Below, piece by piece: positions 19,302-41,200 of a DNA stretch of 64,000 nt. This stretch comes from Macrostomum lignano (Eukaryota). The notes under the pieces are model-generated. The model worked only from the letters and a program-made list of their open reading frames with translations, was not told where the DNA came from and did no database searches. Every line of letters starts with the position of its first letter. Position 1 is the stretch's first letter. A program made the position numbers and the translations under genes. The stretch spans positions 372,001 to 436,000 of the forward strand of contig NIVC01000363.1 of the NCBI GenBank assembly GCA_002269645.1, read 5' to 3'.

Positions 19302-22300
19302 TCACAATGGGTAGGCAAAATCCGGCAACACTGCCACGAGGTCGCTGTCTCCGGGAATTCCGCTATTGAAAGCCCCTGCAATGCCGCCGCGACTAACCGA
19401 CGCCACGGCGGCCCGGCCGATGCCCCAGCCGAATCGCCATTTCAACTGCTGAAACAATCGATAGAACTCTGACGACTCGGTGCCAGCCGCAGGCTGCTGA
19501 CAATTAGGCAAGGCACTTGACTCGCCACTATGAGTAGTATGAGTAGGCATTTTAGCGCCAGAGTTATTCGACAATAATCGAATAACAATTCGTTTCTGAC
19601 GTTGCAACGGTCTTCTACTAGGATAATCGAATACTTCCAGATCGTCGGTGTCGATGCTGAACAAGGGCGGAGGCGGCGGTTGAGGCTGAGGATGAGGCGC
19701 CGGCGGCTGTGGAAGAGGCGGAGAGATTAATTCAAACATTGGCGGCTGCTGTGTCTGCTTCTGCTTTTGCTGTTGCTGCTGCTGCGGCGGCGACGCTTCG
19801 GCAGCCAGCCGCAGAGGCGGCTCCTCCGATGCCAGAGGCGGCGTTAGCGGACGGTCGCTGATGGCGGGCAACGTGGAGGCCTCCGAGCACTGGTCGGCTG
19901 ACAGAGCTGCAAAATTGGGAATAGATGTTCATTTGTGTCACTACTGCTCTACTACTGCGGATAGTAAGTAGTATAGAGAGAAAAGTTACACTATAACTTT
20001 TATGTGAAATGTAAAAACTGCCTTCAACACTTTAAAACTACGAGTACAAGTCCTGACACAACACTAAATGTCCTGACACAACAAACTACATGTCCTGACA
20101 CAACAAAACTGCATATCCTGACCCAACAAAACTACATGTCCTGACACAGCACTACATGTCCTGACACAACAAAACTACATGTCCTGACACAGCACTACAT
20201 GTCCTGACACAACAAAACTACATGTCCTGACACAGCACTACATGTCCTGACACAAAAAACTACATGTCCTGACACAAAAAACTACATGTCCTGACACAAA
20301 AAAAACTAAATGTCCTGACACAACAAAACTACATATCTAGACAGATTAAAAATGCATGTCCTGTAGTCCTGACACTGCAAAAGTACATACCTAGACGCAG
20401 TAAAAGTACTTGTTTAAGCATACTAAGTGCATATTTAGACAAAATATTTATAAAAATGCGGACAAACCTCCGAAATTAAGCAGGTCCGCCATGCAGCTGA
20501 CATCGGAGTCCGGCACTGGTAAATCGCCTCGACTTTCAACGACATCATCATCGTCTCTTAGCAGAGGCAGCTGGGAGGGCACCGGGTCGTCCTGCATCAG
20601 GCCCAGCTGAGGCATCGCCGGCTCCAGCACTGGCGGTCGAGAGTTCGGCGAGCAAGCAGCTTCTGGACTGATCACATCGACATCTGCGCCAATATCGATC
20701 GGCAGTAGAGCCTGGCTCAGGTGCTGCTCCTGCAGAAACTGCTGCTGCTGCTGTTGCTGCTCCAACAGCATCAACAGGCCGTCAACATTCTCGGCGATGC
20801 TATCAGCTGCGGCAACAGAGCTGAGCAGATCCGGGCCCTGCTGAAGTTGTCGCTGTTGCGACATCAGGCCGAAGTTCACTGATGAAGCAGCGCAGAGTCT
20901 GCGAAACTGATAGAGCGGCAGGTCGAGCATCGAAGCGAACCCGTCGCTCGATGCCAACGCGCTGTACACGCTAGCGGCCAAGCGCCAATCACGACAATCT
21001 TCGCCTGCGCCACGGCAGCTCTCCGAATCGCATTCGACGTCATCGGCAGCAACCGGAAGCTCTTCTTCCTCTTCATCTGACAGCGATTCGTTATCAGCCT
21101 GGCGCCTGGCAACAGATTCCATCGACAATCGCCTCAGATAGGCCAACAGTCTGCAGCGAAGCCTGACGGCGGAGGCCACGGACTCCACATCAGCAGTCTG
21201 GCCGACAATCGCCGGCGTCAATTGCGCCAGCAGGCGAGGCAGCGACTTGCGCACAGCTGGCCAGCTTCTGTCCAGCAAGGGCGGCATCTCTGCAGCTGAC
21301 TGCAGCCCGGAAGCCGCGGCTGAACCATCGGACGATAACAGCAGCCGACGAAGCAACGGATTCGACTGTCTGCCACGACTAGGCGATAGTCTTGCTAGAA
21401 GTGTCGCGGCGGCCTCTTGCAGATCGACAGCCTCGGCTGGTCGCCAGACTGAACAAGGCGGAGTGGTGGCCAGCAGGCAGGAGAGCAGGTGAACAGCGAT
21501 GGCGAACTCGGAGGCTGGCCAAGTCAGATGAGGATTACTAGCGCAAGCTTGCAGACAGCGTAGGCAGCGAGACAGCAGAACGGGCGAGTGGCCGAATCGA
21601 CGACATAGCCGGCCAAGGAACTGCAGTAGGCGGGAAAGGATCCGGCCGAGGGCGGGAGTGTCCGTGCTGGCAAGGTGGCGGAGCAGGTGATGGAATGGCG
21701 GCTGCTGCTGCGGACTCTGCTTAGAATTGCCTGGTTGCTGCTTCACTCGCTGCTGCTGCGGCTGCTTCAAAGACGAAGAAACCGACTGGATTGGACGATT
21801 CAACGGACGACGTAGTAGTAGGAGTCGACGAATCTCAGCGCTATAGGCAGCTTCAGCCTGGGTCAGAGTGGCCGTAGATGAAGCTAAACTGCCAGTATTA
21901 ACAGAGTCCAAACTGTTGGTAGAAGAGTTGCACACGCGCAGTATAGACAGAGGCGCCGATACGGACGGATCAGCGCTGCCAACCCGAGCTCTGCGCAGCA
22001 GCAGCAGCGGATCTAAGCAAGTCTCCGGCAGGTAGCGAAGACCAGCCAAGTCCGGGTCGCCAGCCACAGCTTCCGCCGGAAGTCGTACAGGCGTCGGGCA
22101 GGTTAGCAGCTCCGCTGGTGGCGCCAGATGACCAATCAAACGCGGCGACTTCGACGCTAAGCAAGCGGAATCGACATCGTCGACAGTTAATCGCCTGCGC
22201 GCCGAATGTCGCATCCGTTGGGCAGCCTTGGTGATGAGGTGCCGAGTCTGGTAGGTGACCTCCTGGGCCAGGCAGAGCAGGGCGTCCCGATTGGCCAGCT

Positions 22301-22532
22301 GGGCTCCGGCCGAGTCGCACCATAGGCGGAGAGTTTCGGCGCTTAGCAGAGCGAATGATTGGCGCTCCTGCTGGGCAGCGGCTGCAGCCGCCGCGGCGCC
22401 GGAGGTCACGCCAATGTACTGCTGCTGCTGCGGCTGTTGCTGCGCCTGCGGCGAAGGCGAAGATTGAAACGAAGGCGAGGGCGACGCTGACGGCTTTTTG
22501 CGCTTTGTTGTTGGCGCTTGCTGGATTGGCAA
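19302..22532 (-). CDS. TAF6L: TAF6/TAF6L-like histone-fold protein (TFIID/SAGA subunit family); 5' end unresolved
   Basis: ORF 22532-20468 encodes an H4-like TAF6 histone fold (AETLRLWCDSAG...LAQEVTYQTRHLITKAAQRMRHSARRRLTVDDVDSA) followed by a helical region. Donor G|GTTTGT at 20467 and acceptor TTTTGCAG at 19907 join in phase 1 to exon 19906-19302 (Pro/Gln-rich). The listed start at 22532 is TTG, not ATG. TAF6 versus TAF6L cannot be settled without alignment. Confidence 0.6.
20050..20345. repeat. ~23-nt minisatellite (TCCTGACACAACAAAACTACATG) in the TAF6-like intron
   Basis: Direct reading. Confidence 0.85.
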
Positions 22533-23331
22533 GAGTAGTTTTAGGACATATTGACACTGTTCATCCTGGGTTTGTCAAGCATCAGAATCGCAGTGCCATT
22601 CTAGGCATTTTGGGTCCAAATTCAAGATGCCAGCTGTTATCAGTCAGAAAGTCAAAAATCTAATAAAATACCAACATCTCTGCCCTATGCTTACACTTCT
22701 GACTGCCTCTCTGACTCACAGAAGTTGCAGAAATCTGCAGACTTTATGTTTACAGATTGCTCAAATTTAACAATTGATAGGAGACTAACCTAAATTTGGA
22801 ACCCCAGGTGCCAATTTGGAACATACATGTGCAACCCCCCCCCCTGATTTACACTGGCTGTGAAACTTACTAAAACCAATTTTGCTATCAATATCATTAG
22901 GCCTAGACTTAATTATCCATTGATAGTTAAAAGTTAATTAGGCAAGTTGGTGGCCATAAAAATAGAATTAAACAGAAAGAAACAACTTTTGTACATAAAT
23001 AATAATTCCTTTAAGCTATTGATAAATCTAAAAAGAGCAAAGATTTAATTAAGAATACATAGGCCTAAGCTAGGCCCTATTCATTTTCATATTATATTTT
23101 CTTTAAAGGCCAATCAAAACTACAATAGGCCTTTCTTTATAATATTTAAACTAGGCATAGTGCCTAGTCTCATCATTTAAAATCTTATAGATTGACCTTT
23201 CAATAAAAATGACAATTTATTATGGCCTTAGCCCCTAGGCATATTTTGTCTATTGCTATATCAACTATTTACTAGGCCTTAGTCTAGAGAATATGATAAA
23301 TGGTAGTAATAAAGTCTACTAAACTGGTAAG

Positions 23332-26418: not shown

Positions 26419-29400
26419 ATGTCACACTTCCTACAGCCTGGCGATTTGGCGCCACCGTTTCGCAGCCAGGCAGTGAAAAATGGCGAAATCGTATCCGATT
26501 TCACGTTAGAGGACGCGATGCGAGACGCTCAGTACCTGCTGCTGGTCTTTTATCCATCCGACTTGTGAGTTCTTTTGTTTATTTTGAAGGTTGAGGCTTT
26601 TAAATTGATGCATGTAGAGTACACATTAAAGTCGATCGATCTCCTTGGGTTCCATCTCGGTGTCTTGGAAGTCTCCTTGATTTCCATCTCTGTGTCTTGG
26701 AAGTTTCCTTGATTTCCATCTCCGTGTCTTGGAAGTCTCCTTGATTTCCATCTCCGTGTCTTGGAAGTCTCCGTGATTTCCGTTAACGTGTGTTGGAAGT
26801 CTCCTTGAGTTCCATCTCCGTGTCTTGGAAGTCTCCTTGATTTCCATCTCCGTGTGTTGGAAGTCTCCTTGATTTCCATCTCCGTGTCTTGGAAGTCTCC
26901 TTGATTTCCATCTCCGTGTCTTGGAAGTCTCCTTGATTTCCATCTCCGTGTCTTGGAAGTCTCCTTGATTTCCATTAACGTGTGTTGGAAGTCTCCTTGA
27001 TTTCCATCTCCGTGTGTTGGAAGTCTCCTTGATTTCCGTTAACGTGTGTTGGAAGTCTCCTTGATTTCCGTTAACGTGTGTTGGAAGTCTCCTTGATTTC
27101 CATCTCCGTGTGTTGGAAGTCTCCTTGATTTCCATCTCCGTGTCTTGGAAGTCTCCTTGATTTCCATCTCCGTGTCTTGGAAGTCTCCTTGATTTCCATT
27201 AACGTGTGTTGGAAGTCTCCTTGATTTCCGTTAACGTGTGTTGGAAGTCTCCTTGATTTCCGTTAACGTGTGTTGGAAGTCTCCTTGATTTCCGTTAACG
27301 TGTGTTGGAAGTCTCCTTGATTTCCATCTCCGTGTCTTGGAAGTCTCCTTGATTTCCGTTAACGTGTGTTGGAAGTCTCCTTGAGTTCCATCTCCGTGTC
27401 TTGGAAGTCTCCTTGATTTCCATCTCCGTGTGTTGGAAGTCTCCTTGAGTTCCATCTCCGTGTGTTGGAAGTCTCCTTGAGTTCCATCTCCGTGTCTTGG
27501 AAGTCTCTTTGGTATTCCTCTCCGTGTCTCAGAACTTTATTCGATATACCTGCTCATATTTCCCTGCCTTTCATCTCTGCCTCATGGAAGTCCGCATGGC
27601 CTTCACGTGAAGGCCAACTAGTTTTGGGATTAAGTGATTCGACTAGGTTAGTTTTATAAATTTAAATTTTGATACGCCAGTCCGTTCAATCTTAAACCCA
27701 ATTGATTTTAATATTTGCTTTTTTAATTTTGGTCTTACGTGTCATTGATTCCTAGAAATAAAATTGATATTAAGAAAAACCAACTTTTACTGCAGCACAT
27801 TCGTTTGCCCGACCGAAGTGCAACAATTTGCCGACAAATGGACCGAACTAACCGAGCAGTTGAAGTGCAGCACAGTCTGCTGCTCAACTGACTCGGCTTT
27901 CACCCACCTGGCCTGGCTGAAGGCGCCTAAAAGCGAGCGCGGCCTCGGTTGGACTGCCGAACAGGCGGCCGCCGGATTTCCGGTTCTGCTCAGCGACCGG
28001 ACTCACGAGATTGCCGAGGCCTACGGAGTGCTGGCGCCGGATGCTGGGGCCTCGTACAGGTGGGAATGATGAAGTCTATTGTATATTAGGATGCTGGGGC
28101 CTCGTACAGGTGGGAATGATGAAGTCTACTGTTATATTAGGATGCTGGGGCCTCGTACAGGTGGGAATGATGAAGTCTACTGTTATATTAGGATGCTGGG
28201 GCCTCGTACAGGTGGGAATGATGAAGTCTACTGTTATATTAGGATGCTGGGGCCTCGTACAGGTGGGAATGATGAAGTCTACTGTTATATTAGGATGCTG
28301 GGGCCTCGTACAGGTGGGAATGATGAAGTCTACTGTTATATTAGAATGCTGGGGTCTCGTACAGGTGGGAATGATGAAGGCACACACACACAGGGTGTAA
28401 AGTTCCCCCCAAGTCTCCTAGTGTCAGGCATGTAAACTTTTTTGGCCTTCATGAACGACTATTTGGATGGCAAGTCCTTGGTCAATTTGCAGGGAATCGA
28501 ACCCTGGCGTCTGAAGAATGGAGCACGTAGGATTGAGTATTAGTATTTTTGTTTTGAGGCTGGGAATGCAGCGGAAATGTACCATAAGTTGTAGAAAGAA
28601 TGAAAAGAGGGACGCAGAGTGGGTGAGATGGATGAGAAGAATACGTGTTACAGGCCTGCAAGTAGTCAAATAATCGTTCAAATTTCTCCCCTCGTCGCTG
28701 TCCTCCCCAGAGCAACTTTCCTAGTCGGTCCCGATCGCCGGATCTGCCAGGCCAGCATCAGCGACATGCCGGTTGGCCGCTCGGTCGAAGAAGCCGTCCG
28801 CCTACTGACGGAGATGCGCGCCGGCGGCGGAGGGAGCCTCAACGGCGGTAGCGGCGGACCGACTGGCGGCCGGGTCAGTCGGCGCGTTGGCCGGTCAGCG
28901 TCCAGCTGCTCGCGACCGAGACTACCGGACCCGGGGCAGCAGCCGCTGATGCAGCAACGTCAGCAGCCGCAGCAGCCGCAGTTTCGATGTCAATCGCAGC
29001 AGCAGCAGCAGTACCAGCCAGCTGCGGCCATGGATCCCTATCCTGCGGCGTCCATGGCATCTGGGGCTCCGTTCCCCGCTGCTGTACAGTCTGCAGCAGT
29101 TGTTTCTGGCGGCGGCGGCGGCGGCGGGGGAGTCGGGGGCAGCGGGTACCAGTGCGAGCCGCAGTCGTTCAACGTTGGACAGCCGGTCTGCTCAAATCTG
29201 GCCGTTGAGGCAGCCAATTTGGAGAGACAGGTGAGAGGCTCGGTGTTTCTTAGCTGGTCAGTCAAGAATGTCGACTTTTTACACGCGTGTCTAAAGAGTT
29301 CTTTGTTGAATTTCAAAACTACGCTCGTATTAATCGTTATTTTTTGCCGTTTGGACAATGCTCGGTTCGGCATAAGGTCCTTGATTAAGTTTATTAATTT

Positions 29401-31197
29401 AGGTTGTCACAGGCCCGTGAAGTCTGTTATTTAAGGCTGAATACGAAGCAACCAAACAAACAGGCAACAAAGCTACCAAGAAATTAAACAACCAAGCAAC
29501 CAAGCAGCCATCAACCAAGCAATTAGACAGCCAAGCAACCAAGCAGCCATCAACCAAGCAATTAGACAGCCAAGCAACCAAGCAACAAGGCAAAAAGACA
29601 ACCAAGCAACCAAGCAACCAAGCAACCAAGCAACCAAGCAACCAAGCAACCAAGCAACCAAGTAATTAGACAGCCAAGCAACCAAGCAACCAAGCAACCA
29701 AGCAAACAAGCAGCCGAACAACCAAGCAACCAAGCAGCCGAACAATTAGACAGTCAAGCAACCAAGCAACCAAGCAACCAAGCAGCCGAACAACCAAGCA
29801 ACCAAGCAACCAAGCAACCAAGTAATTAGACAGCCAAGCAACCAAGCAACCAAGCAACCAAGTAATTAGACAGCCAAGCAACCAAGCAACCAAGCAGCCG
29901 AACAACCAAGCAACCAAGCAACCAAGTAATTAGACAGCCAAGCAACCAACCAAGCAACCAAGCAGCCGAACAACCAAGCAACCAAGCAGCCGAACAATTA
30001 GACAGCCAAGCAACCAAGCAACCAAGCAGCCGAACAAGCAAGCAACCAAGCAGCCGAACAATTAGACACCCAAGCAACCAAGCAACCAAGCAACCAAGCA
30101 AACAAGCAGCCGAACAACCAAGCAACCAAGCAGCCGAACAATTAGACAGTCAAGCAACCAAGCAACCAAGCAACCAAGCAACCAAGCAGCCGAACAACCA
30201 AGCAACCAAGCAGCCGAACAATTAGACAGCCAAACAACCAAGCAGCCAAGCAACCAAGCAACCAAGCAACCAAGCAGCCAAGCAACCAAGCAACCAAGCA
30301 ACCAAGCAACCAAGCAACCAAGCAGTCGAACAACCAAGCAACTAAGCCATGAATGAAATAAGCTAATAGAAAATTACAAACATACAAAAAACAATCAGAA
30401 TAATTCATCCAATCAATAACAAAACAAAGTGCTTCTATGTACTTTTGGGTGGCTATTCATATGTCTTTTGTATCTTGCTTTTTCTGTTCTTCATATCACA
30501 CTCTTCATATGTCAATACCAGCTCAGCAGCGCATCTCAAAGAGCACGCGCGTCAACCATCATCCATCCCGCAGGCCGCCATGCTGCGGGTGCGCGACAGC
30601 GAAGACCGGCTGGCCTGGATGCTGGCCGAGACAGAGCGGCTCCGGTCTGAAGCCGAGCGCATCAGGGCCGACACGGAGCGCCTAAAAAACGAGGCCAGAC
30701 GTCGCGAGGCCGAAGCAGAACGGGTGATGTCCTGCCACTCCGCCTGCCAGACTGTCAGCAGCAGCAGCGCCGCGCCAGTCAGCGCCGTCAGTGGGTCCGG
30801 CGGAATCGCCGCGATGACGCCTGCCAGAGCTGCAACAGCTGGCGCGGTTGACGACTGCAGCTGGTCAACAACGGGGATGCTTGGCGCTGGAGGAGGCCCC
30901 GGCTACAGTGCCGGAGTGAGCCAGGGTTATCGGCCTCCGCCGCCTCCGCCACCGACTCAGCAGCAGCCGCAACAGCAGCAGGCGATGGCGCAGAGTCAGC
31001 AGCTGTACCACCACTGCCAGCCGACCACAGCTGCTGTTGTATCGCTCGGCGGGATGTGCCAGCAGCAGCAGCCGCAGCAGCTGAGACAGCAGCAGGCCCA
31101 GCTCCAGCAACAACAACAGCAGCAGCAGCAAGCAAAGTCGCATATCTGCCGCAGAAGCAGCAACGTTGTCGCTTCTCACATTGGGCACAAATGCTAA
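26419..31197 (+). CDS. Atypical peroxiredoxin (AhpC/Prx1-type domain) with long Gln/Gly-rich and coiled-coil C-terminal extension, ~517 aa
   Basis: Exons 26419-26564 (GTGAGT), 27796-28059 (GTGGGA), 28711-29230 (GTGAGA), 30574-31197; phases 2/2/0 are consistent. Spliced active site FYPSDFTFVCPTE (PxxxTxxC, Cys53), STDSAFTHLAW, conserved Arg in SYRATF, DMPVGRSVEEAVRL. Inclusion of exon 4 is less certain than exons 1-3. Confidence 0.85.
26640..27510. repeat. 32-nt minisatellite (GTGTCTTGGAAGTCTCCTTGATTTCCATCTCC), ~27 copies, peroxiredoxin intron 1
   Basis: Direct reading. Confidence 0.93.
28039..28378. repeat. 51-nt tandem repeat (7 copies) comprising the peroxiredoxin exon 2 3' end plus its splice donor
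   Basis: Unit GGATGCTGGGGCCTCGTACAG|GTGGGAATGATGAAGTCTACTGTTATATTA; starts at 28039, 28089, 28140, 28191, 28242, 28293, 28344. Confidence 0.95.
29445..30345. repeat. 8-nt (AACCAAGC)n array with recurrent longer variants, peroxiredoxin intron 3
   Basis: Direct reading. Confidence 0.92.
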
Positions 31198-31935
31198 ACA
31201 AAGCGAAAAACAAGCGAAGGTGCGAAAGCGGAACAAAAACAAGTTTTTATCGATTTTTGCACATTTTTTCCAACGAAAAAACTGCGGCTCATTTTAACAA
31301 ACCGACTTTGCCCTGCGTGGTTTTAATTTTTTCCACCAAATCCGGTATACTCTGCACTCAACTCATATAGTTTTACCCTCAAGCCCGTTTAGCTTAAAAT
31401 AGCTTAAAAACACCGCCGGAAAAGAAGGTAACGCCAAAGAAAATAAACCATACTTCTGCGTCAATTTGTCGGCGAATATATTTTTTCTGGAACGAAGTTC
31501 GTCTATTTAATAAATACAATTGTTTAGTTTCTGCTAATTTTTACATATCATGGCGGGGCGGTCTCGGATTTTTGAACCCGAGAGTAATCACGTGACTTCG
31601 GCCTTGGTCCTCGGTTTGCAAAAGCCGGGGTATTCTGGACCAGTGCTCGGCGTGAATTAGGTAGTTTAGTCTTAAAAAATCTTTCAGCCATTAAAGATTT
31701 TGACAAATCAAGCGCACTTGCCTACTATTTTGCTGCTGTTAGTAGGTAAGCGCGCATGATTTGTCAAAATCTTTTAGTTGGTAAGAGTTTTTAAGAGCTT
31801 TGTTGGTAGAGTTGGTAGGGGATGCATGATTAAGCGCGCATGACATAAACGCGCATGACATAAGCGCGCATTTTTTAACTGCTCTCAGTGACACAAGCGC
31901 GCACTGGCACAAGCGCGTATTTAAAATGCATGAAT

Positions 31936-33365
31936 CAGCTGCAGCCAATGCCGGACCATCAGCTGCAGCCAGTACCGGACTATCAGCTGCAGCCAGTGCC
32001 GGACCATCAGCTGCAGCCAGTACCGGACCATCAGCTGCAGCCAGTGCCGGACCATCAGCTGCAGCCAGTGCCGGACCATCAGCTGCAGCCAGTGCCGGAC
32101 CATCAGCTGCAGCCAGTACCGGACCATCAGCTGCAGCCAGTGCCGGACCATCAGCTGCAGCCAGTACCGGACCATCAGCTGCAGCCAGTGCCGGACCATC
32201 AGCTGCAGCCAGTACCGGACCATCAGCTGCAGCCAGTGCCGGACCATCAGCTGCAGCCAGTGCCGGACCATCAGCGGCAGCCAGTGCCGGACCATCAGCT
32301 GCAGCCAGTACCGGACCATCAGCTGCAGCCAGTACCGGACCATCAGCTGCAGCCAGTGCCGGACCATCAGCTGCAGCCAGTACCGGACCATCAGCTGCAG
32401 CCAGTGCCGGACCATCAGCTGCAGCCAGTGCCGGACCATCAGCTGCAGCCAGTACCGGACCATCAGCTGCAGCCAGTACCGGACCATCAGCTGCAGCCAG
32501 TACCGGACTATCAGCTGCAGCCAGTGCCGGACCATCAGCTGCAGCCAGTACCGGACCATCAGCTGCAGCCAGTGCCGGACCATCAGCTGCAGCCAGTGCC
32601 GGACCATCAGCTGCAGCCAGTGCCGGACCATCAGCTGCAGCCAGTACCGGACCATCAGCTGCAGCCAGTGCCGGACCATCAGCTGCAGCCAGTACCGGAC
32701 CATCAGCTGCAGCCAGTGCCGGACCATCAGCTGCAGCCAGTACCGGACCATCAGCTGCAGCCAGTGCCGGACCATCAGCTGCAGCCAGTGCCGGACCATC
32801 AGCGGCAGCCAGTGCCGGACCATCAGCTGCAGCCAGTACCGGACCATCAGCTGCAGCCAGTACCGGACCATCAGCTGCAGCCAGTGCCGGACCATCAGCT
32901 GCAGCCAGTGCCGGACCATCAGCTGCAGCCAGTTCCGGACCATCAGCTGCAGCCAGTACCGGACCATCAGCTGCAGCCAGTGCCGGACCATCAGCTGCAG
33001 CCAGTACCGGACCATCAGCTGCAGCCAGTGCCGGACCATCAGCTGCAGCCAGTGCCGGACCATCAGCTGCAGCCAGTGCCGGACCATCAGCTGCAGCCAG
33101 TACCGGACCATCAGCTGCAGCCAGTGCCGGACCATCAGCTGCAGCCAGTACCGGACCATCAGCTGCAGCCAGTACCGGACCATCAGCTGCAGCCAGTGCC
33201 GGACCATCAGCTGCAGCCAGTGCCGGACCATCAGCTGCAGCCAGTACCGGACCATCAGCTGCAGCCAGTACCGGACCATCAGCTGCAGCCAGTACCGGAC
33301 CATCAGCTGCAGCCAGTACCGGACCATCAGCTGCAGCCAGTGCCGGACCATCAGCTGCAGCCAGT
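31936..33365. repeat. 24-nt GC-rich array (CAGCTGCAGCCAGTGCCGGACCAT), ~59 copies; possibly coding (see findings)
   Basis: Direct reading; open in two plus frames and one minus frame. Confidence 0.95.
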
Positions 33366-33939
33366 GGTAGAACTTTAAAGAGTCAAAGTCAAGTGAAAAC
33401 AACAGAGGCCAACCGATAAAAATCAAATGCTTTGCAAGTAATTCAAATATATAAAAGAGCATTGCGAACTGGATAGAGCTGGTTGCAAGTGTATTGGCTT
33501 TAGTGTGGGTGGCTTTTCAGTCTGATCCAGACAAACAGATTCACAATTGTCTGCAGAAGAGCATTTGGTTGTGTTTAAAAAATAAATAACAAAACTACAG
33601 TGCAGTGCACAAAGCACAAAGGCCTTGTTTATTAGGCAGCTTTTTTCCTAAGCACAAGCACTTACTTGGCTATTAGTTCTCTGAAGCTTAAAAAGCATAT
33701 GAAACTACTTTAAGTATAACAAAGATTGGCGAGATTAAAAATGGAAAATATTGAAAACAGAAAAATCGTTTCTGTAAAGCAAGCTAAAAGTTGTTTTACG
33801 CAATTTTTTTCTGTTAGAACTTGGATTAAAGCAATTGTGATGGTTGCCTACAAAATCATGCACTGCGTCTATTGTGCTTACGGACTTTGAAGGCAACTCA
33901 GGCTGTTTCGTGTTGATTTCAGTGTTTGTGTCACTCTCT

Positions 33940-34627: not shown

Positions 34628-37312
34628 GCTACACCCAAGCTACCAATGGTCACAGATACCCGTGCACCCAAGCTACCAATGGTCACAGATACCCGTGCAC
34701 CCAAGCTACCAATGGTCACAGATACCCGTGCACCCAAGCTACCAATGGTCACAGATACCCGCGCACCCAAGCTACCAATGGTCACAGATACCCGTGCACC
34801 CAAGCTACCAATGGTCACAGATACCCGTGCACCCAAGCTACCAATGGTCACAGATACCCGTGCACCCAAGCTACCAATGGTCACAGATACCCGTGCACCC
34901 AAGCTACCAATGGTCACAGATACCCGTGCACCCAAGCTAGCAATGGTCACAGATACCCGCGCACACAAGCTACCTATGGTCACAGATACCCGTGCACCCA
35001 AGCTAACAATGGTCACAGATACCCGTGCACCCAAGCTAGCAATGGTCACAGATACCCGTGCACACAAGCTACCAATGGTCACAGATACCCGTGCACCCAA
35101 GCTACCAATGGTCACAGATACCCGCGCACCAAAGCTAGCAATGGTCACAGATACCCGTGCACCCAAGCTACCAATGGTCACAGATACCCGCGCACACAAG
35201 CTACCAATGGTCACAGATACCCGTGCACCCAAGCTACCAATGGTCACAGATACCCGTGCACCCAAGCTACCAATGGTCACAGATACCCGTGCACCCAAGC
35301 TACCAATGTTCACAGATACCCGTGCACCCAAGCTACCAATGGTCACAGATACCCGTGCACACAAGCTACCAATGGTCACAGATACCCGTGCACCCAAGCT
35401 ACCAATGGTCACAGATACCCGTGCACCCAAGCTACCAATGGTCACAGATACCCGTGCACCCAAGCTAGCAATGGTCACAGATACCCGTGCACACAAGCTA
35501 CCAATGGTCACAGATACCCGTGCACCCAAGCTACCGATGGTCACAGAACCCGTGCACCCAAACTAGCAATGGTCACAGATACCCGCGCACACAAGCTACC
35601 AATGGTCACAGATACCCGTGCACACAAGCTACCAATGGTCACAGATACCCGTGCACCCAAGCTACCAATGGTCACAGATACCCGCGCACCCAAGCTACCA
35701 ATGGTCACAGATACCCGTGCACCCAAGCTACCAATGGTCACAGATACCCGCGCACCCAAGCTAACAATGGTCACAGATACCCGCGCACCCAAGCTACCAA
35801 TGGTCACAGATACCCGTGCACCCAAGCTACCAATGGTCACAGATACCCGTGCACCCAAGCTACCGATGGTCACAGAACCCGTGCACCCAAACTAGCAATG
35901 GTCACAGATACCCGCGCACCCAAGCTACCAATGGTCACAGATACCCGCGCACCCAAGCTAACAATGGTCACAGATACCCGCGCACCCAAGCTAACAATGG
36001 TCACAGATACCCGTGCACCCAAGCTAACAATGGTCACAGATACCCGCGCACCCAAGCTAACAATGGTCACAGATACCCGTGCACACAAGCTACCAATGGT
36101 CACAGATACCCGTGCACCCAAGCTACCGATGGTCACAGAACCCGTGCACCCAAACTAGCAATGGTCACAGATACCCGCGCACCCAAGCTACCAATGGTCA
36201 CAGATACCCGTGCACCCAAGCTACCAATGGTCACAGATACCCGCGCACCCAAGCTACCAATGTTCACAGATACCCGTGCACCCAAGCTACCAATGGTCAC
36301 AGATACCCGCGCACCCAAGCTACCAATGGTCACAGATACCCGCGCACCCAAGCTACCAATGGTCACAGATACCCGCGCACCCAAGCTACCAATGGTCACA
36401 GATACCCGTGCACCCAAGCTACCAATGGTCACAGATACCCGCGCACCCAAGCTACCAATGTTCACAGATACCCGTGCACCCAAGCTACCAATGGTCACAG
36501 ATACCCGTGCACCCAAGCTACCAATGGTCACAGATACCCGCGCACCCAAGCTAACAATGGTCACAGATACCCGCGCACCCAAGCTACCAATGGTCACAGA
36601 TACCCGCGCACCCAAGCTACCAATGGTCACAGATACCCGCGCACCCAAGCTACCAATGGTCACAGATACCCGCGCACCCAAGCTACCAATGGTCACAGAT
36701 ACCCGTGCACCCAAGCTAACAATGGTCACAGATACCCGCGCACCCAAGCTACCAATGGTCACAGATACCCGCGCACCCAAGCTAACAATGGTCACAGATA
36801 CCCGCGCACCCAAGCTACCAATGGTCACAGATACCCGTGCACCCAAGCTACCAATGGTCACAGATACCCGCGCACCCAAGCTACCAATGGTCACAGATAC
36901 CCGTGCACACAAGCTACCAATGGTCACAGATACCCGTGCACACAAGCTACCAATGGTCACAGATACCCGTGCACCCAAGCTACCAATGGTCACAGATACC
37001 CGTGCACACAAGCTACCAATGGTCACAGATACCCGTGCACACAAGCTACCAATGGTCACAGATACCCGTGCACCCAAGCTACCAATGGTCACAGATACCC
37101 GTGCACCCAAGCTACCAATGGTCACAGATACCCGCGCACCCAAGCTACCAATGGTCACAGATACCCGCGCACCCAAGCTACCAATGGTCACAGAACCCGT
37201 GCACCCAAGCTACCAATGGTCACAGATACCCGCGCACCCAAGCTACCAATGGTCACAGATACCCGCGCACCCAAGCTACCAATGGTCACAGATACCCGCG
37301 CACACAAGCTAC
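34628..37312. repeat. 33-nt minisatellite (CACCCAAGCTACCAATGGTCACAGATACCCGTG), ~80 copies, abutting the neverland stop codon
   Basis: Direct reading; a 1-nt-deleted variant unit recurs near 35530, 35860, 36125 and 37180, shifting the ORF frames. Confidence 0.95.
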
Positions 37313-37765
37313 CAGTCCTTCGAGTCGCGCAGCGATTCAATAGTCGGAGAATTCTCCGAATAGAACTGCGAGTACCAGCGCCTGTGCTGCACCATCAGCG
37401 AGTCCTCGGTGGACTTGGCCAGCACCGGCTTGTCTTTGAACTCTTTGTTGTTCCAGATCATGATGTCGCGCTCGAATTGGAAAGCCTCGCCATTCAGGTA
37501 GACTGTGGCCACGATGTTGGGCACCCAACGTTGCATGTAGATGCTGTGGTGGACTCGGAGCAGCAGCGGCTCCACCGGGGTCACGCAGTGCAGGAATACG
37601 CCTTTGCCGAATAGGCTGTCGAACTCCAGGTACACCACGGCGGGACCGAGCTGCGGGAATCGTTCGGAATTAGTTAGTCAATCAATCAATCAATCAATAA
37701 ATAAATCAATCAATCAGTCAATCAATTAATCAATCAATCAATCAATCAGACAATCAATCAATCAG

Positions 37766-37840
<75 letters not shown>

Positions 37841-37857
37841 GAAAATCAATCAATCAG

Positions 37858-37896
<39 letters not shown>

Positions 37897-37943
37897 GTCA
37901 ATCAATCAACCAACCAATCAATCAATCAATCAATTAATCAATT

Positions 37944-38013
<70 letters not shown>

Positions 38014-38015
38014 CT

Positions 38016-38048
<33 letters not shown>

Positions 38049-38174
38049 GTGAATCAATTAATCAATCAATTAATCAATCAATCAATAAATTAACCAATCA
38101 GACAATCAATCATCAATCAATCAATCTATCTATCTATCAATCCTATCAATCAATCCAATCAATCAACCAATCAA

Positions 38175-38205
<31 letters not shown>

Positions 38206-38250
38206 GTTAATCAATCAGTCAATCAATTAATCAATCAATCCTATCAATGA

Positions 38251-38285
<35 letters not shown>

Positions 38286-41200
38286 TAGTTAATCAGTCAA
38301 TCAATTAATCAATCAATTAATCAATCAATTAATTAATCAATCAGACAATCAATTAAATAATCAATCAATCAATCAATCAATCAGTTCATCAGTAAATCAA
38401 TATATTTAGTTGCAAATCATCTGTGGAACATAAAAACAGTCAACAGCAATCAGTTAAACAATTAATTTATATAGGTTTATTGATTTATTTAGCAGCATAA
38501 TAGAAAGCTAAACAGTTCCCACGCCCTGACCTCACCTGGTTGGCTCTGACCGTCATCTCAACAAACTTGACATTCTTTCCAAACAAGTAGGTCTTCTCGT
38601 GCAGCACCATGACAGCCTGGTGCCGGCTTCCCGGCTCGGTGCACGGCTTCCAGGTGGCTGAGAACTTCTGCCACAGAAAGCTGCTCCACCAGCGGAAGAT
38701 GTAGCGCAAATCTGTGCCGCCAAAGAAGCTGGGATCGTGCACCGTTGTCAGGTGGCCCACGTCTGCTCCGTTCTGGTTGATTTCCTGAGAGTAGGTTGAG
38801 TTTCAGCTTATTGTATCTATACTTGTCTCAGCCAGTCAAAAAGCAGTTAGTTTACAATGGCAGCAAAGCAGCTGCTATTCAAGTGGGGGGGCATCACAAA
38901 CCCGAAAAATCACAACTCCGAAAAGCGCTTTCCATCATAAACCCGGAATATCATAGACCCGAAATATCACAAACCCGAAAAATCACAACTCCGAAAAGCG
39001 CTTTCCATCATAAACCCGAAATATCATAAACCCGAAATATCATAAACCCGAAATATCACAAACCCAAAAAATCACAAGTCCGAAAAGCGCTTTCCATCAT
39101 AAACCCGAAATACCATAAATCCGAAATATCATAAACCCAAAATATCACAAACCCGAAAAATCACAACTCCGAAAAACAAAAATAGCATTGCCCATCATGA
39201 GCCCGAAATATCACAAACCCAAAATATCACAAACCCGAAATATCATAGACCCGAAATATCATAAACCCGAAATATGGTTTATGGTATTTCGGGTTTATGA
39301 TGGGCAATGCTATTTTGGTTTTCGGAGTTGTGATTTTTCGGGTTTGTGATATTTCGAGTCTATGATATTTCGGGTTTATGATATTTCTGGTTTATGATAT
39401 TTCTGGTTTATGAAATTCTGAAATTTTCTGAATATGCTGGAATTCTACTGTGCTTCGGGTCTATTTTAATTTTTGCATTTTTTCTTAATTACGGGTGCTT
39501 CCATTCACAGTCACTGTAGAAACACAGTTCCCCGTCCTACTTGAGCAGTCCTTGCTATTAGCAGGAATATAGTCTTTATAGTCTGGCAGTCGCAGTGTGC
39601 ATACATCATGCGCTTTGGGGGTTGGCGCCGGAGCCACTCTGCCCCGACAGATAAGGAAAGAACACGGCGATATTTAAGGTGCACATTTGATGCCTAGCGG
39701 TCTAGACGAGGCTAAACAGCCAGCCAATCAGGAACGAGATAAGAGCAAAGAAAGGAATCTATGGCTGTTTAATGTACATTCGCAACGTACATTCGTTAGA
39801 AAGAAAACTAGCGGTTCTCTTACCTCGATATGGCAGTTAACAAAGTGCCTAGTTCGACCCTTGAAAGACCATTCGCCAGTTTCAATCTCTTCAATCACAG
39901 GCAGATCCCAGGTCGGTTCTCTGCCCTCGGCGTCGAACCACAAGTAGAGGCCGCCGTTTACTTCCTTGACGATGTGACTGGTGACGCGAGCCATTTCGGG
40001 AACTGAGAACGGAGAATGGTATTAAAGTGCATTAATTTATAAAATTCATCGGTGACATCTACAGCAGATACCACCTGAGAGAGACAGCAGATACCACCTG
40101 AGAGAGACAGCAGATACCACCTGAGAGAGACAGCAGATACCACCTGAGAGAGACAGCAGATACCACCTGAGAGAGACAGCAGATACCACATGAGAAAGAC
40201 AGCAGATACCACCTGAGAGAGAGAAGATACCACCTGAGGCTCAAGTACCTTAACTTATAAGTGTCTTACCAGTGACAACGAAAAAAAAGTTTTAAAAATT
40301 CGCCGCAACGTTCATACTCGTAAATCATCCAGTGTTCAGAAAAAAAGAAGAAAGCATTTTGGTTTCAGTTCTGTGTTGTACCCTGCGTATTCAGCTACTA
40401 TATTCGTTCTTTTTGAAGGAAAGCGATGCGCGTACCAAAAATGTGCAGCCCAAGGAGAAAGCTTACCGAAACAGAAAGTTGAAGAAAGCCTACAAGAACA
40501 CAGTGGCTGGTCTTCTTTTAGTTGCTGGGTGCCCCTATTTTGGACAAACAGAAAATTTTTTTCGAAACTTACTATGCTGGAATTCTACTGTGCTTCGGGT
40601 CTATTTTAATTTTTGCATTTTTTCTTAATTACGGGTGCTTCCATTCACAGTCACTGTAGAGGGAGAACTGAAGTAGGAGAGGGTGGGGAGAAAAGACAGA
40701 GGGAAGACAAGGAGAGAGGGGATAAAGGGAGAGAGGAGGCAGGGAGAGAGGGGGAGACAGGAAGAGAGGGGGGATAGGAGAGAGGGGAAGATAGGAGAGA
40801 GGGGGAGATAGGAGAGAGGGAAGATAGGAGAGAGGGGGAGATAGGAGAGAGGGGAGATAGGAGAGAGGGGGAGATAGGAGAGAGGGGGGATAGGAGAGAG
40901 GGGGAGATAGGAGAGAGGGGGGATAGGAGAGAGGGGGAGATAGGAGAAAGGGGGAGAAAGTGAGTGAGGGGAGAAAGTGAGTGAGGGGAGAAAGTGAGTG
41001 AGGGGAGACAGTAGAGGGGGATGGGCATGGCTAGGGACCGTGAAAGCGAGATGTATAATCGCGAAGCAATGCCACTACGACCTAATACAGGTAGGAGGGT
41101 AAACGTTATTGTAAATTTACTAACTGAATGCACGTACTTCAGTACTTTGGGAGTATATAGTCGACCTCTCCTCAAAAAAGTACGCACTGCTCTATCAAGT

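What the first reader, a model, noticed from the sequence alone, without database searches (positions are those of the whole stretch)
26419..31197. Peroxiredoxin with no canonical resolving Cys, fused to a ~345-aa Gln/Gly-rich coiled-coil tail
Seen: an intact peroxidatic site (PSDFTFVC53PTE) and catalytic Arg. After GRSVEEAVRLLTEM (~aa 172), where typical 2-Cys Prx1 enzymes continue to the VCP resolving Cys and YF helix, the same exon runs straight into GGGGS/poly-Q/poly-A sequence, so the fusion does not depend on my splicing model. A phase-0 join then adds a heptad-like charged segment (RLAWMLAETERLRSEAERIRADTERLKNEARRREAEAERV) and more poly-Q. GGLG has become RGLG, with a WTAEQAAAG insertion after it. 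Established: GGLG and YF confer hyperoxidation sensitivity, and the resolving Cys normally lies in the C-terminal arm. Inference: a neofunctionalised redox sensor or scaffold, in which a thiol sensor is tied to a condensate-prone tail with about ten scattered Cys that could act as alternative resolving or relay thiols. I do not recognise this architecture.
Basis: partly seen in the sequence, partly recalled or inferred. Interest (0 to 1): 0.75.

Follow-up and report, generated by a model that had tools for sequence, protein, structure and literature searches.

The report
Flatworm peroxiredoxin with long disordered tail
This is a real, already catalogued but unstudied gene of the flatworm Macrostomum lignano. 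It encodes a peroxide-sensing enzyme (peroxiredoxin) that has lost the second cysteine it normally needs and carries a long, mostly floppy tail with one conserved helix. That makes it an unusual variant of a very well-known enzyme, not a new kind of system.

Summary
Window 26419-31197 (+) is a 4-exon gene encoding 517 aa: a Prx1/AhpC-type peroxiredoxin domain (aa 1-172; Pfam AhpC-TSA E 4e-24) plus a 345-aa Q/A/G/S-rich tail.

- **Active site:** Pro46, Thr50, Cys53, Glu56, Arg137 and Arg160 are all present.
- **Losses:** the resolving Cys, the YF helix and the 1-cysPrx_C domain are absent, and no hidden "HGEVCPANW" exon exists in the 64 kb.
- **Annotation:** my model is identical to GenBank PAA84736.1 (BOX15_Mlig016974g2, "hypothetical protein"), whose annotation derives from RNA-seq transcripts.
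- **Paralogue:** Mlig013099 (about 58-60% identical in the domain) shares the truncation, a disordered linker and a homologous long helix.
- **Selection:** dN/dS is about 0.09 for the domain between paralogues and about 0.16 for the tail between near-identical copies, so the gene is not decaying.
- **Distribution:** searches of 5.8 and 1.84 billion proteins found the architecture only in M. lignano.
- **Tail cysteines:** the 11 tail Cys are absent from the paralogue, so they are not a conserved resolving or relay set.

The most likely function is a 1-Cys-type sulfenate sensor/relay, or a modifier of Prx hetero-oligomers, tethered through the helix. This is inferred, not shown. It is a new variant of a known kind, of moderate interest.

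The parts
26419..26564 (+). Exon 1 (aa 1-48 plus 2 nt): start codon, N-terminal beta-hairpin, beta3 up to YPSDF. No signal or transit peptide precedes the domain.
   Evidence: Same exon in copy g1. AF2 pLDDT 84-97.
26565..27795 (+). Intron 1 (phase 2, GT-AG), carrying a 32-bp minisatellite at 26640-27529 (27.8 copies).
   Evidence: The array has 12.9 copies in copy g1.
27796..28059 (+). Exon 2 (aa 49-137). Holds the peroxidatic Cys53 codon (27806-27808), Thr50 and Glu56; Cys73/77/78 in beta4; RGLG plus the WTAEQAAAG insertion (27938-27976); and the first two bases of the catalytic Arg137 codon.
28039..28379 (+). 51-bp tandem array (6.7 copies) that duplicates the 3' end of exon 2 together with its 5' splice site. 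Only the first donor (28059|28060) is productive; reading on reaches TGA after 3 codons.
   Evidence: The array is also in copy g1.
28711..28816 (+). Exon 3, first part (aa 137-172): beta6, beta7 (Cys149 codon 28745-28747), PVGR160SV and helix alpha5, ending at RLLTEM. This is the end of the Prx fold.
28817..29191 (+). Exon 3, second part (aa 173-297): Gly/Gln/Ala-rich linker, continuous with the domain in one ORF. GGP at 28853-28861 aligns with the VCP of canonical Prx.
   Evidence: pLDDT <50. Alignment to 76 canonical Prx. No stop before the donor.
29192..29230 (+). End of exon 3 (aa 298-310): start of the long helix.
   Evidence: helix 296-371 in P0001 numbering, which is 298-373 here
29231..30573 (+). 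Intron 3 (phase 0, GT-AG), carrying an AAGCAACC array at 29446-30347. If this intron were retained, the ORF would add 67 aa and stop at 29432-29434.
30574..30762 (+). Exon 4, first part (aa 311-373): charged heptad-like helix (RLRSEAE/RIRADTE/RLKNEAR/RREAEAE). This is the only tail segment homologous between the paralogues.
   Evidence: BLASTP E 4e-07 between the tails. pLDDT >90 in both paralogues. Heptad layout.
30763..31197 (+). Exon 4, second part (aa 374-517 plus stop): Ser/Ala/Gly, poly-Pro and poly-Gln C-terminal region. It is absent from the paralogue. AF2 predicts a poly-Q helix near the C-terminus (474-514 in P0001 numbering).

Best explanation
The gene is BOX15_Mlig016974g2 of Macrostomum lignano. 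It is an expressed, selectively maintained paralogue of the typical 2-Cys (Prx1/AhpC-type) peroxiredoxins, so far seen only in this lineage.

**What is shown**
- The thioredoxin-fold core keeps a complete peroxidatic site (Pro46, Thr50, Cys53, Arg137, plus Glu56 and the second Arg160).
- The C-terminal arm that normally carries the resolving Cys and the YF helix is gone.
- In its place is a roughly 345-aa tail that is mostly disordered and contains one conserved charged helix of about 75 residues.
- The design predates a gene duplication and is under purifying selection.

**What is inferred about mechanism**
- Cys53 should still react rapidly with peroxide to give a sulfenic acid.
- A homodimer cannot form the usual intersubunit CP-CR disulfide, so the protein behaves as a 1-Cys-type Prx.
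- The sulfenate must then be resolved by an outside thiol. Candidates are the resolving Cys of a canonical Prx1 subunit in a hetero-oligomer, a client protein held nearby, or GSH/Trx/TGR. Otherwise it is hyperoxidised.
- The conserved helix most likely dimerises or docks a partner, and the disordered Q-rich regions act as spacers or weak multivalent contacts.

I therefore read it as a tethered peroxide sensor/relay, or a modifier of Prx oligomers, rather than a bulk thioredoxin-dependent peroxidase as UniRef's automatic name says.
For: **Gene model and identity**
- Model.
- Identical to PAA84736.1 and to NIVC01000363.1.
- The GenBank annotation of this assembly was built from RNA-seq/StringTie/TACO transcripts, not ab initio prediction (PMC5730564). 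The same four exons are used in copy g1.

**Prx1-type domain**
- Pfam AhpC-TSA E 4e-24, with no 1-cysPrx_C hit.
- The 60 listed PDB matches are Prx1-4, tryparedoxin peroxidase and AhpC types.
- Foldseek TM 0.8-0.9.

**Catalytic residues and losses**
- Catalytic residues are invariant in the alignment with 76 canonical Prx, whereas their Cys in VCP (76/76) is Gly here.
- No C-terminal-arm exon exists in any frame of the 64 kb; only GRSVEEAVRLL matches the arm profile.

**Paralogue and selection**
- Paralogue Mlig013099 (two copies) has the same truncation point, a disordered linker and a homologous helix.
- dN/dS is 0.09 for the domain between paralogues. Between copies g1 and g2 there are 11 synonymous and 4 non-synonymous changes, with 0 non-synonymous in the domain.
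- Exons differ by 1.0% and unique intron segments by about 3.4% between the copies.

**Canonical Prx and literature**
- M. lignano also has a canonical prdx1. Its published qPCR primers encode RGLFII and FQFTDK and are absent from the window.
[quoted passage not shown] That this probe passes its oxidation to the fused roGFP2 and is highly H2O2-sensitive is my own recollection of the original probe paper, which I did not read here.
- In 1-Cys Prx the resolving role is taken by a small thiol or by another protein's Cys (PMC4749874).
Against: - I saw no reads or cDNA directly. Expression is inferred from how the annotation was made, and the gene IDs were in none of the supplementary tables I could search.
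- No orthologue outside M. lignano was found. The collections probably lack other Macrostomum transcriptomes, so conservation beyond one genome is untested.
- The domain is only about 40% identical to canonical animal Prx1, so hetero-oligomerisation is not assured.
- The helix's heptad and charge-pair statistics are marginal, and the monomer-only prediction cannot show a coiled coil.
- Outside the helix the tail is not alignable between the paralogues (dN/dS about 0.6 on a doubtful alignment), so much of it may be functionally neutral.
- No biochemical data exist.
Confidence: 0.5

Rival explanations
1. It is an atypical 2-Cys peroxiredoxin. A cysteine elsewhere in the same protein resolves the Cys53 sulfenate. 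Candidates are Cys149 in beta7 or Cys77/78 in beta4, which are conserved in both paralogues, or, in this paralogue only, a tail Cys such as Cys203. The protein would then remain a thioredoxin/TGR-recycled peroxidase.
For: - Cys149 replaces an Arg present in 66/76 canonical Prx, and Cys77 replaces a Gly present in 67/76. Both changes are shared by the two paralogues.
- The tail of this paralogue has 11 Cys.
- Glu56 and Arg160, which correspond to the Glu50 and Arg146 that Tsa1 needs for reduction by thioredoxin (Tairum 2012, as cited in PMC4749877), are retained.
- Resolving Cys have arisen several times in Prx evolution (PMC4749874).
Against: - None of these Cys lies at any of the five known resolving positions (N-terminus, alpha2, alpha3, alpha5, C-terminal arm). 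Cys73/77/78 and Cys149 are in core strands of the model.
- Tail Cys are absent from the paralogue and vary between copies g1 and g2.
- I could not measure distances because model coordinates are not exposed.
Confidence: 0.2
2. It is a redundant duplicate on its way to decay. After genome duplication a spare Prx1 copy lost its C-terminus by mutation, read through into junk low-complexity sequence, and has no specific function.
For: - M. lignano has massive recent duplication (PMC5730564).
- The domain is very divergent, about 40% identical to animal Prx1.
- Most of the tail is low-complexity, predicted disordered and unalignable between the paralogues.
- Degenerate Prx1-like proteins with long tails are predicted sporadically elsewhere. 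One is in the mite Dinothrombium (catalytic Thr lost); another is a Logan protein with CP changed to Ser.
Against: - Four intact copies exist, two per paralogue.
- The catalytic residues are all kept.
- dN/dS is 0.09 across a saturated-dS divergence.
- The helix is conserved (E 4e-07).
- The tail has dN/dS 0.16, and the only tail indel between copies g1 and g2 is in frame.
- The gene model is transcript-based.
Confidence: 0.12
3. The full-length architecture is partly an annotation artefact. Exon 4 (helix plus poly-Q) belongs to a separate or alternative transcript, and the real protein ends after exon 3 or after a retained intron 3.
For: - M. lignano has many polycistronic, trans-spliced transcriptional units.
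- Older models of the same loci differ (P0002, P0004, P0271).
- The position of intron 3 is not the same in the paralogue: phase 1, about 25 codons further upstream relative to the helix.
- An alternative in-frame acceptor exists at 30544.
Against: - In both diverged paralogues a helix-encoding last exon lies downstream of the Prx exons on the same strand and is joined in frame in the transcript-derived models.
- The helix begins in exon 3 and continues across the junction.
- Even without exon 4, the Prx domain runs into at least 138 tail codons within exon 3.
Confidence: 0.08
4. It acts mainly as a redox-switched chaperone or structural scaffold. It would form Prx-ring or high-molecular-weight assemblies decorated with disordered Q-rich arms, and peroxidase chemistry would serve only as the switch through hyperoxidation of an unresolvable Cys53.
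For: - Without a resolving Cys the sulfenate is long-lived and prone to hyperoxidation (established Prx chemistry).
- The segments that build the decamer interface (FYPxDFTF, STDSxxTHLAW) are largely kept.
- Long helix and poly-Q segments are predicted.
- The C-terminal arm that sulfiredoxin embraces during repair is missing (PMC4749874), so hyperoxidation might be irreversible.
Against: Oligomeric state and condensate behaviour cannot be tested here. The paralogue lacks the long C-terminal poly-Q region, so that part is not a family feature.
Confidence: 0.1

Closest known systems
Typical 2-Cys peroxiredoxins (Prx1/AhpC subfamily: human PRDX1-4, Schistosoma Prx1, hookworm Prx1, yeast Tsa1)
   Same: - Same fold and same subfamily by sequence and structure.
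- Same catalytic Pro/Thr/Cys/Arg, Glu56 and second Arg.
- Same FTFVCPTE, STDS..HLAW and PVGRSV motifs.
   Different: - No resolving Cys, no YF helix and no 1-cysPrx_C region.
- GGLG is RGLG, followed by an inserted loop of variable length.
- Arg to Cys at position 149.
- A 345-aa tail.
- Only about 37-41% identity to animal Prx1-4.
1-Cys peroxiredoxins (Prx6 subfamily), and the rare CR-less members reported in every Prx subfamily (PMC4749874)
   Same: No resolving Cys. The sulfenate must be resolved by an external thiol or protein.
   Different: - Not a Prx6 by sequence: the motif is FTFVCPTE rather than PVCTTE, and the listed best PDB hits are Prx1-type.
- Prx6 keeps a folded C-terminal domain (PF10417), which is missing here.
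Engineered probe roGFP2-Tsa2deltaCR, and Prx redox relays (Prx2-STAT3, Tsa1/Tpx1-transcription factor)
   Same: A peroxidatic Prx1-type module without its resolving Cys, covalently tethered to another polypeptide. As I recall the probe's design (not read here), removing CR diverts oxidising equivalents to a neighbouring thiol. [quoted passage not shown]
   Different: - This protein is natural, not engineered.
- The tethered part has no known redox-active domain.
- Its cysteines are not conserved in the paralogue.
- Relay activity is untested.
Leishmania cPRX2 (a Prx1-type isoform with a naturally shortened C-terminus lacking YF; PMC10955670, PMC13038412)
   Same: A lineage-specific extra Prx1-type isoform with an altered C-terminus that coexists with a canonical isoform. 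That isoform alters oligomer state in hetero-oligomers.
   Different: As I understand it from the abstract seen, cPRX2 keeps the resolving Cys. It is nearly identical to cPRX1 and has no added tail.
Other predicted Prx1-like proteins with long tails (Dinothrombium tinctorium RWS13540.1, 405 aa; an unnamed 692-aa Logan protein)
   Same: An N-terminal Prx1-like domain with a long charged or low-complexity C-terminal extension. The mite protein also lacks VCP.
   Different: - Their catalytic sites are degenerate (Thr lost, or CP changed to Ser).
- Their tails are unrelated.
- They are probably independent events or mis-annotations.

Membership tests
Peroxiredoxin superfamily, Prx1/AhpC subfamily | Thioredoxin-fold AhpC-TSA domain with the PxxxT/SxxC motif and the catalytic Arg | tested here: met
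   Pfam PF00578 at 85 bits against a cutoff of 26. P46, T50, C53 and R137 are invariant in the alignment. Foldseek TM 0.8-0.9 to Prx1-4.
Peroxiredoxin superfamily, Prx1/AhpC subfamily | Closest to Prx1-type rather than Prx6, Prx5, PrxQ or Tpx by sequence | tested here: met
   All 60 listed PDB matches are Prx1-4, tryparedoxin peroxidase, AhpC or Tsa types, with best E 1.8e-35. FTFVCPTE, STDS.F.HLAW and PVGRSV motifs are present.
Typical 2-Cys peroxiredoxin (mechanistic class) | Resolving Cys in the C-terminal arm (VCP motif) that forms an intersubunit disulfide | tested here: not met
   Cys is present in 76/76 canonical sequences and is Gly in both paralogues. No 1-cysPrx_C hit. No arm-like exon in the 64 kb.
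Hyperoxidation-sensitive eukaryotic 2-Cys Prx | GGLG loop and C-terminal YF helix | tested here: not met
   GGLG is RGLG in both paralogues (Gly in 76/76 canonical sequences), followed by an inserted loop. The YF region is absent.
Atypical 2-Cys peroxiredoxin | Resolving Cys in alpha2, alpha3 or alpha5, or at the N-terminus (PMC4749874) | tested here: not met
   Domain Cys are at 53 (CP), 73/77/78 (strand 73-79) and 149 (strand 147-154). None lies in helices 54-62, 83-91 or 161-174, or before residue 53.
1-Cys peroxiredoxin, Prx6 subfamily | Prx6-type active-site signature and a folded C-terminal domain (PF10417) | tested here: not met
   No PF10417 hit. The active-site motif is Prx1-type. It behaves like a 1-Cys Prx but is not a Prx6 member.
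Thioredoxin-dependent peroxiredoxin (UniRef automatic name) | Turnover by thioredoxin reduction of a CP-CR disulfide | not testable with these tools
   Needs an enzyme assay. The absence of a CR makes the automatic name doubtful.
Coiled-coil protein | Heptad repeat with hydrophobic a/d positions that forms an oligomeric helix bundle | tested here: inconclusive
   A long helix with pLDDT >90 is predicted in both paralogues, and an R-[LIV]-x-x-x-[AT]-E repeat is visible. The best-register score is reached by 7% of shuffles here and 84% in the paralogue. A single charged ER/K-type helix is equally possible.

The most novel reading that the evidence does not exclude
Macrostomum carries a small family of naturally hard-wired peroxiredoxin relays. 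A fully reactive Prx1-type peroxidatic module has deliberately lost its resolving Cys and is tethered by a disordered linker to a conserved docking or dimerising helix, plus Q-rich arms in this paralogue. H2O2-derived oxidation would then pass to a specific bound partner or to canonical Prx subunits, or would switch assembly or condensation. This would be the natural counterpart of the engineered roGFP2-Tsa2deltaCR design.
Probability: 0.2. Interest if true: 0.7.

Novelty: new variant of a known kind. Interest (0 to 1): 0.4.

Why it matters
Peroxiredoxins are the main cellular H2O2 sensors. How they pass oxidation to specific targets, and how isoforms modulate each other in mixed oligomers, are active questions.

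A natural Prx1-type protein would be a ready-made test case if three things hold together:
- it keeps full peroxidatic chemistry;
- it has discarded the resolving Cys and the sulfiredoxin/thioredoxin-binding arm;
- it is tied to a conserved helix.

M. lignano has RNAi and transgenesis, so the protein can be tested for tethered redox relay or oligomer modulation in a tractable regenerating animal. If it proves to be only a divergent 1-Cys peroxidase, it is a minor addition to Prx diversity and a correction to an automatic database name.

Tried and rejected
1. **Wrong acceptor.** My first exon-4 acceptor (30522) was out of frame. 30574 is correct and matches GenBank.
2. **Full-length homology search swamped.** Poly-Q words dominated the candidate list, so only 4 hits appeared, all M. 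lignano. I repeated it with a chimeric query of domain plus helix.
3. **False orthologue.** P0122 was the third-best hit of the exhaustive search, with 3 matched stretches. It is a mis-assembled canonical Prx3-like protein with repeated segments and an intact HGEVCPANW.
4. **My own Cys149 idea, rejected.** I thought Cys149 replaced the conserved 'second Arg'. By spacing from the catalytic Arg (+23 in Tsa1 and PRDX2), that residue is Arg160 of PVGRSV, which is conserved. Cys149 replaces a different Arg, in beta7 (notes).
5. **Hidden C-terminal-arm exon.** A profile of 76 canonical C-termini was run against all six frames of the window. Nothing matched beyond GRSVEEAVRLL.
6. **Known domain in the tail.** Only sub-threshold coiled-coil or low-complexity matches appeared (NRBF2 21 bits against a cutoff of 36.8, TFIIA, Rab11-FIP3). 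They were not shared by the paralogue.
7. **Profile search with the helix of both paralogues.** No hit.
8. **Gene IDs in supplementary tables.** Mlig016974 and Mlig013099 were searched in four M. lignano papers. They were absent from three, and the fourth had no supplementary files held as text. A full-text search also found none.
9. **Transcript contigs.** A look-up of contigs encoding the exact protein returned only the GenBank genome contigs.

Full report
**What is in the window**

Translating the region gives a four-exon gene on the + strand:
- exon 1, 26419-26564
- exon 2, 27796-28059
- exon 3, 28711-29230
- exon 4, 30574-31197

All introns are GT-AG. The CDS is 1554 nt and encodes 517 aa. 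My first guess for the last acceptor (30522) was out of frame.

- PSDFTFVC53PTE
- Arg137, whose codon is split by intron 2
- RGLG (97-100) followed by WTAEQAAAG
- GRSVEEAVRLLTEM ending at residue 172
- then GGGGS, poly-Q and poly-G in the same exon
- the charged heptad-like segment and more poly-Q in exon 4

The tail is 345 aa (Q 53, A 45, G 40, S 36) with 11 Cys.

**Identity of the locus**

The organism is Macrostomum lignano. The 517-aa model is letter-for-letter identical to GenBank PAA84736.1 (BOX15_Mlig016974g2, 'hypothetical protein'). Window 16419-41197 is identical to NIVC01000363.1:388419-413197 of assembly GCA_002269645.1.

A second copy, g1 (PAA87757.1, 515 aa, 99% identical), lies on NIVC01000218.1 and uses the same four exons. 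The paper describing this assembly states that the GenBank annotation is a filtered genome-guided transcriptome, not an ab initio prediction. It combined StringTie and TACO on RNA-seq with a mapped de novo transcriptome (PMC5730564). The exon joins therefore have indirect transcript support. I did not see reads myself.

Neighbours are a TAF-domain gene upstream and a Rieske/KshA_C gene downstream, both on the minus strand.

**The peroxiredoxin domain**

- Pfam gives AhpC-TSA (E 4e-24, residues 8-148) and Redoxin, but not the C-terminal 1-cysPrx_C domain.
- The best solved relatives are hookworm Prx1, Schistosoma Prx1 and human/bovine Prx3, with E 1e-33 to 2e-35. The alignments stop at residue 170-172.
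- An AlphaFold model built on 79 sequences has pLDDT around 90 over the domain. It superposes on Prx1-4 structures with TM 0.8-0.9.
- In an alignment with 76 canonical Prx, Pro46, Thr50, Cys53, Glu56, Arg137 and Arg160 (the 'second Arg' of PVGRSV) are all kept.
- The Cys of VCP (76/76) is Gly, the first Gly of GGLG (76/76) is Arg, and Arg149 (66/76) is Cys.
- A profile of canonical C-terminal arms, searched against all six frames of the 64 kb, matched only GRSVEEAVRLL. There is no hidden VCP exon.

**A paralogue shows the design is old and constrained**

M. lignano has a second locus, Mlig013099 (two copies, 342 aa). Its Prx domain is about 58-60% identical to this one, and the protein is about 50% identical overall. 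The paralogue shares:
- the same truncation (RMLTELRNG versus RLLTEMRAG)
- RGLG followed by an inserted loop of different length
- Cys73/77/78/149
- a disordered Q-rich linker
- a long helix

The helix is the only tail segment that aligns: 43% identity over 53 residues, BLASTP E 4e-07 with composition adjustment. AlphaFold predicts the same layout for both proteins. The helix is 296-371 (pLDDT >90) in g1 and 270-337 (pLDDT 83-96) in the paralogue, with linkers below 50.

In the paralogue, GGP lies exactly 16 residues after the Arg of R-M-L. That is the spacing of VCP in canonical enzymes. It suggests the resolving Cys was lost in place (Cys to Gly) and the arm decayed and lengthened, rather than a foreign domain being fused. 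This is an inference from the alignment.

Introns 1 and 2 have the same position and phase in both loci. Intron 3 does not.

**Selection**

| Comparison | Region | Result |
|---|---|---|
| Between paralogues | Prx domain | dN 0.28, dS saturated, omega about 0.09 |
| Between paralogues | helix | omega about 0.39 |
| Between paralogues | linker | omega about 0.6, on a doubtful alignment |
| g1 versus g2 | whole CDS | 11 synonymous, 4 non-synonymous |
| g1 versus g2 | Prx domain | 0 non-synonymous |
| g1 versus g2 | tail | omega about 0.16, plus one in-frame 6-nt indel |

Exons differ by 1.0% and unique intron segments by about 3.4% between the copies. Four intact copies with this pattern argue against a decaying pseudogene.

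**Distribution**

- A word-indexed search of 5.8 billion proteins with domain plus helix found only the M. lignano clusters. Below them came ordinary 2-Cys Prx of about 190-260 aa at 46% identity or less, all carrying PF10417.
- An exhaustive HMMER search of 1.84 billion representatives with the two-paralogue profile gave the same answer. The one apparent extra (P0122) is a mis-assembled canonical enzyme.
- Prx1-like proteins with long tails are predicted sporadically elsewhere, for example in the mite Dinothrombium and in one Logan contig. These have degenerate catalytic sites and unrelated tails.
- These collections probably lack other Macrostomum transcriptomes, so 'M. lignano only' is a statement about the databases.
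- I found no paper describing the gene.

The proposal that the scattered tail Cys act as alternative resolving or relay thiols is not supported as a family feature. The paralogue's tail has none, and one tail Cys differs between g1 and g2.

A review of Prx classes lists five positions where resolving Cys occur: the N-terminus, alpha2, alpha3, alpha5 and the C-terminal arm. It also notes that CR-less members exist, rarely, in every subfamily (PMC4749874). None of the five positions holds a Cys here. The domain Cys sit in strands 73-79 and 147-154. The protein is therefore mechanistically 1-Cys-like while belonging to the Prx1 subfamily. UniRef's automatic name, 'thioredoxin-dependent peroxiredoxin', is unverified.

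The 'coiled coil' is a confident long helix with a visible R-[LIV]-x-x-x-[AT]-E heptad. The heptad statistic is marginal, and a single charged helix is equally possible. The tail contains no known domain.

**How it most likely works (inferred)**

1. Cys53 should be oxidised by peroxide to a sulfenic acid.
2. With no resolving Cys in the partner subunit of a homodimer, the sulfenate must take another route. It could react with an outside thiol or be hyperoxidised. It could also be resolved by the CR of a canonical Prx1 subunit in a hetero-oligomer.
3. M. lignano does have a canonical prdx1. Its published primers encode RGLFII and FQFTDK.
4. Recent work shows that Prx1-type isoforms hetero-oligomerise across eukaryotes. 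[quoted passage not shown] That such a probe hands its oxidation to the fused reporter is my recollection of the original probe paper, not something I read here.
5. The conserved helix is the best candidate for dimerisation or partner docking. The Q-rich regions are candidates for spacers or weak multivalent contacts.

I rank this tethered sensor/relay or oligomer-modifier reading first (0.5). The rivals are an atypical 2-Cys mechanism through Cys149 or Cys77/78 (0.2), a decaying duplicate (0.12), a chaperone or scaffold role (0.1) and a partial annotation artefact (0.08).

**Verdict**

The gene is a new variant of a known kind: it is already in GenBank as a hypothetical protein, uncharacterised, and of moderate interest (0.4). 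No step needed to be referred.

Noticed in passing
window 28039-28379: A 51-bp tandem array (6.7 copies) repeats the last 20 nt of exon 2 together with its 5' splice site, giving seven identical donor sites 50-51 nt apart. Only the first is productive; the others would bring in an in-frame TGA. The g1 copy has 5.7 copies (L001 7131-7419).
   Followed up: partly
window 26640-27529, 29446-30347, 31934-33366: Large minisatellites lie in and around the gene: a 32-bp unit x27.8 in intron 1, AAGCAACC x113 in intron 3, and a 24-bp unit x59.7 starting 0.7 kb after the stop. Copy numbers differ two- to three-fold from the g1 copy (12.9, 31+41 and 20.7 copies). They create long spurious ORFs on both strands.
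   Followed up: partly
L001 8700-14227 (intron 3 of copy g1); absent from the window: A minus-strand insertion of about 5.5 kb splits the AAGCAACC array in copy g1. From the ORF translations alone (no domain search was run) it looks like a non-LTR retrotransposon with endonuclease, reverse-transcriptase and RNase H-like ORFs spread over different frames. It is an insertion difference between the two near-identical gene copies.
   Followed up: partly
window 30544: An alternative in-frame acceptor 30 nt upstream of the annotated exon-4 start would add HARQPSSIPQ. This resembles the paralogue's RARPPQQS at the start of its last exon. Intron 3 differs in position and phase between the paralogues.
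   Followed up: no
window 28745-28747 (Cys149) and 27878-27880 (Cys77): Two cysteines are shared by both paralogues at positions where canonical Prx have Arg (66/76) and Gly (67/76). Both lie in core beta-strands, and their role is unexplained.
   Followed up: partly
window 19302-22557 (-) and roughly 37300-41200 (-): The flanking genes are a TAF-domain protein (885 aa) upstream and a Rieske/KshA_C oxygenase (431 aa) downstream. Both are conserved in the same order at the g1 locus.
   Followed up: no
proteins P0240 (Dinothrombium tinctorium RWS13540.1) and P0127 (Logan contig): These are other predicted Prx1-like proteins with long charged or low-complexity C-terminal tails and degenerate active sites (catalytic Thr lost; CP changed to Ser). 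They may be independent pseudo-peroxiredoxin inventions or mis-annotations.
   Followed up: partly
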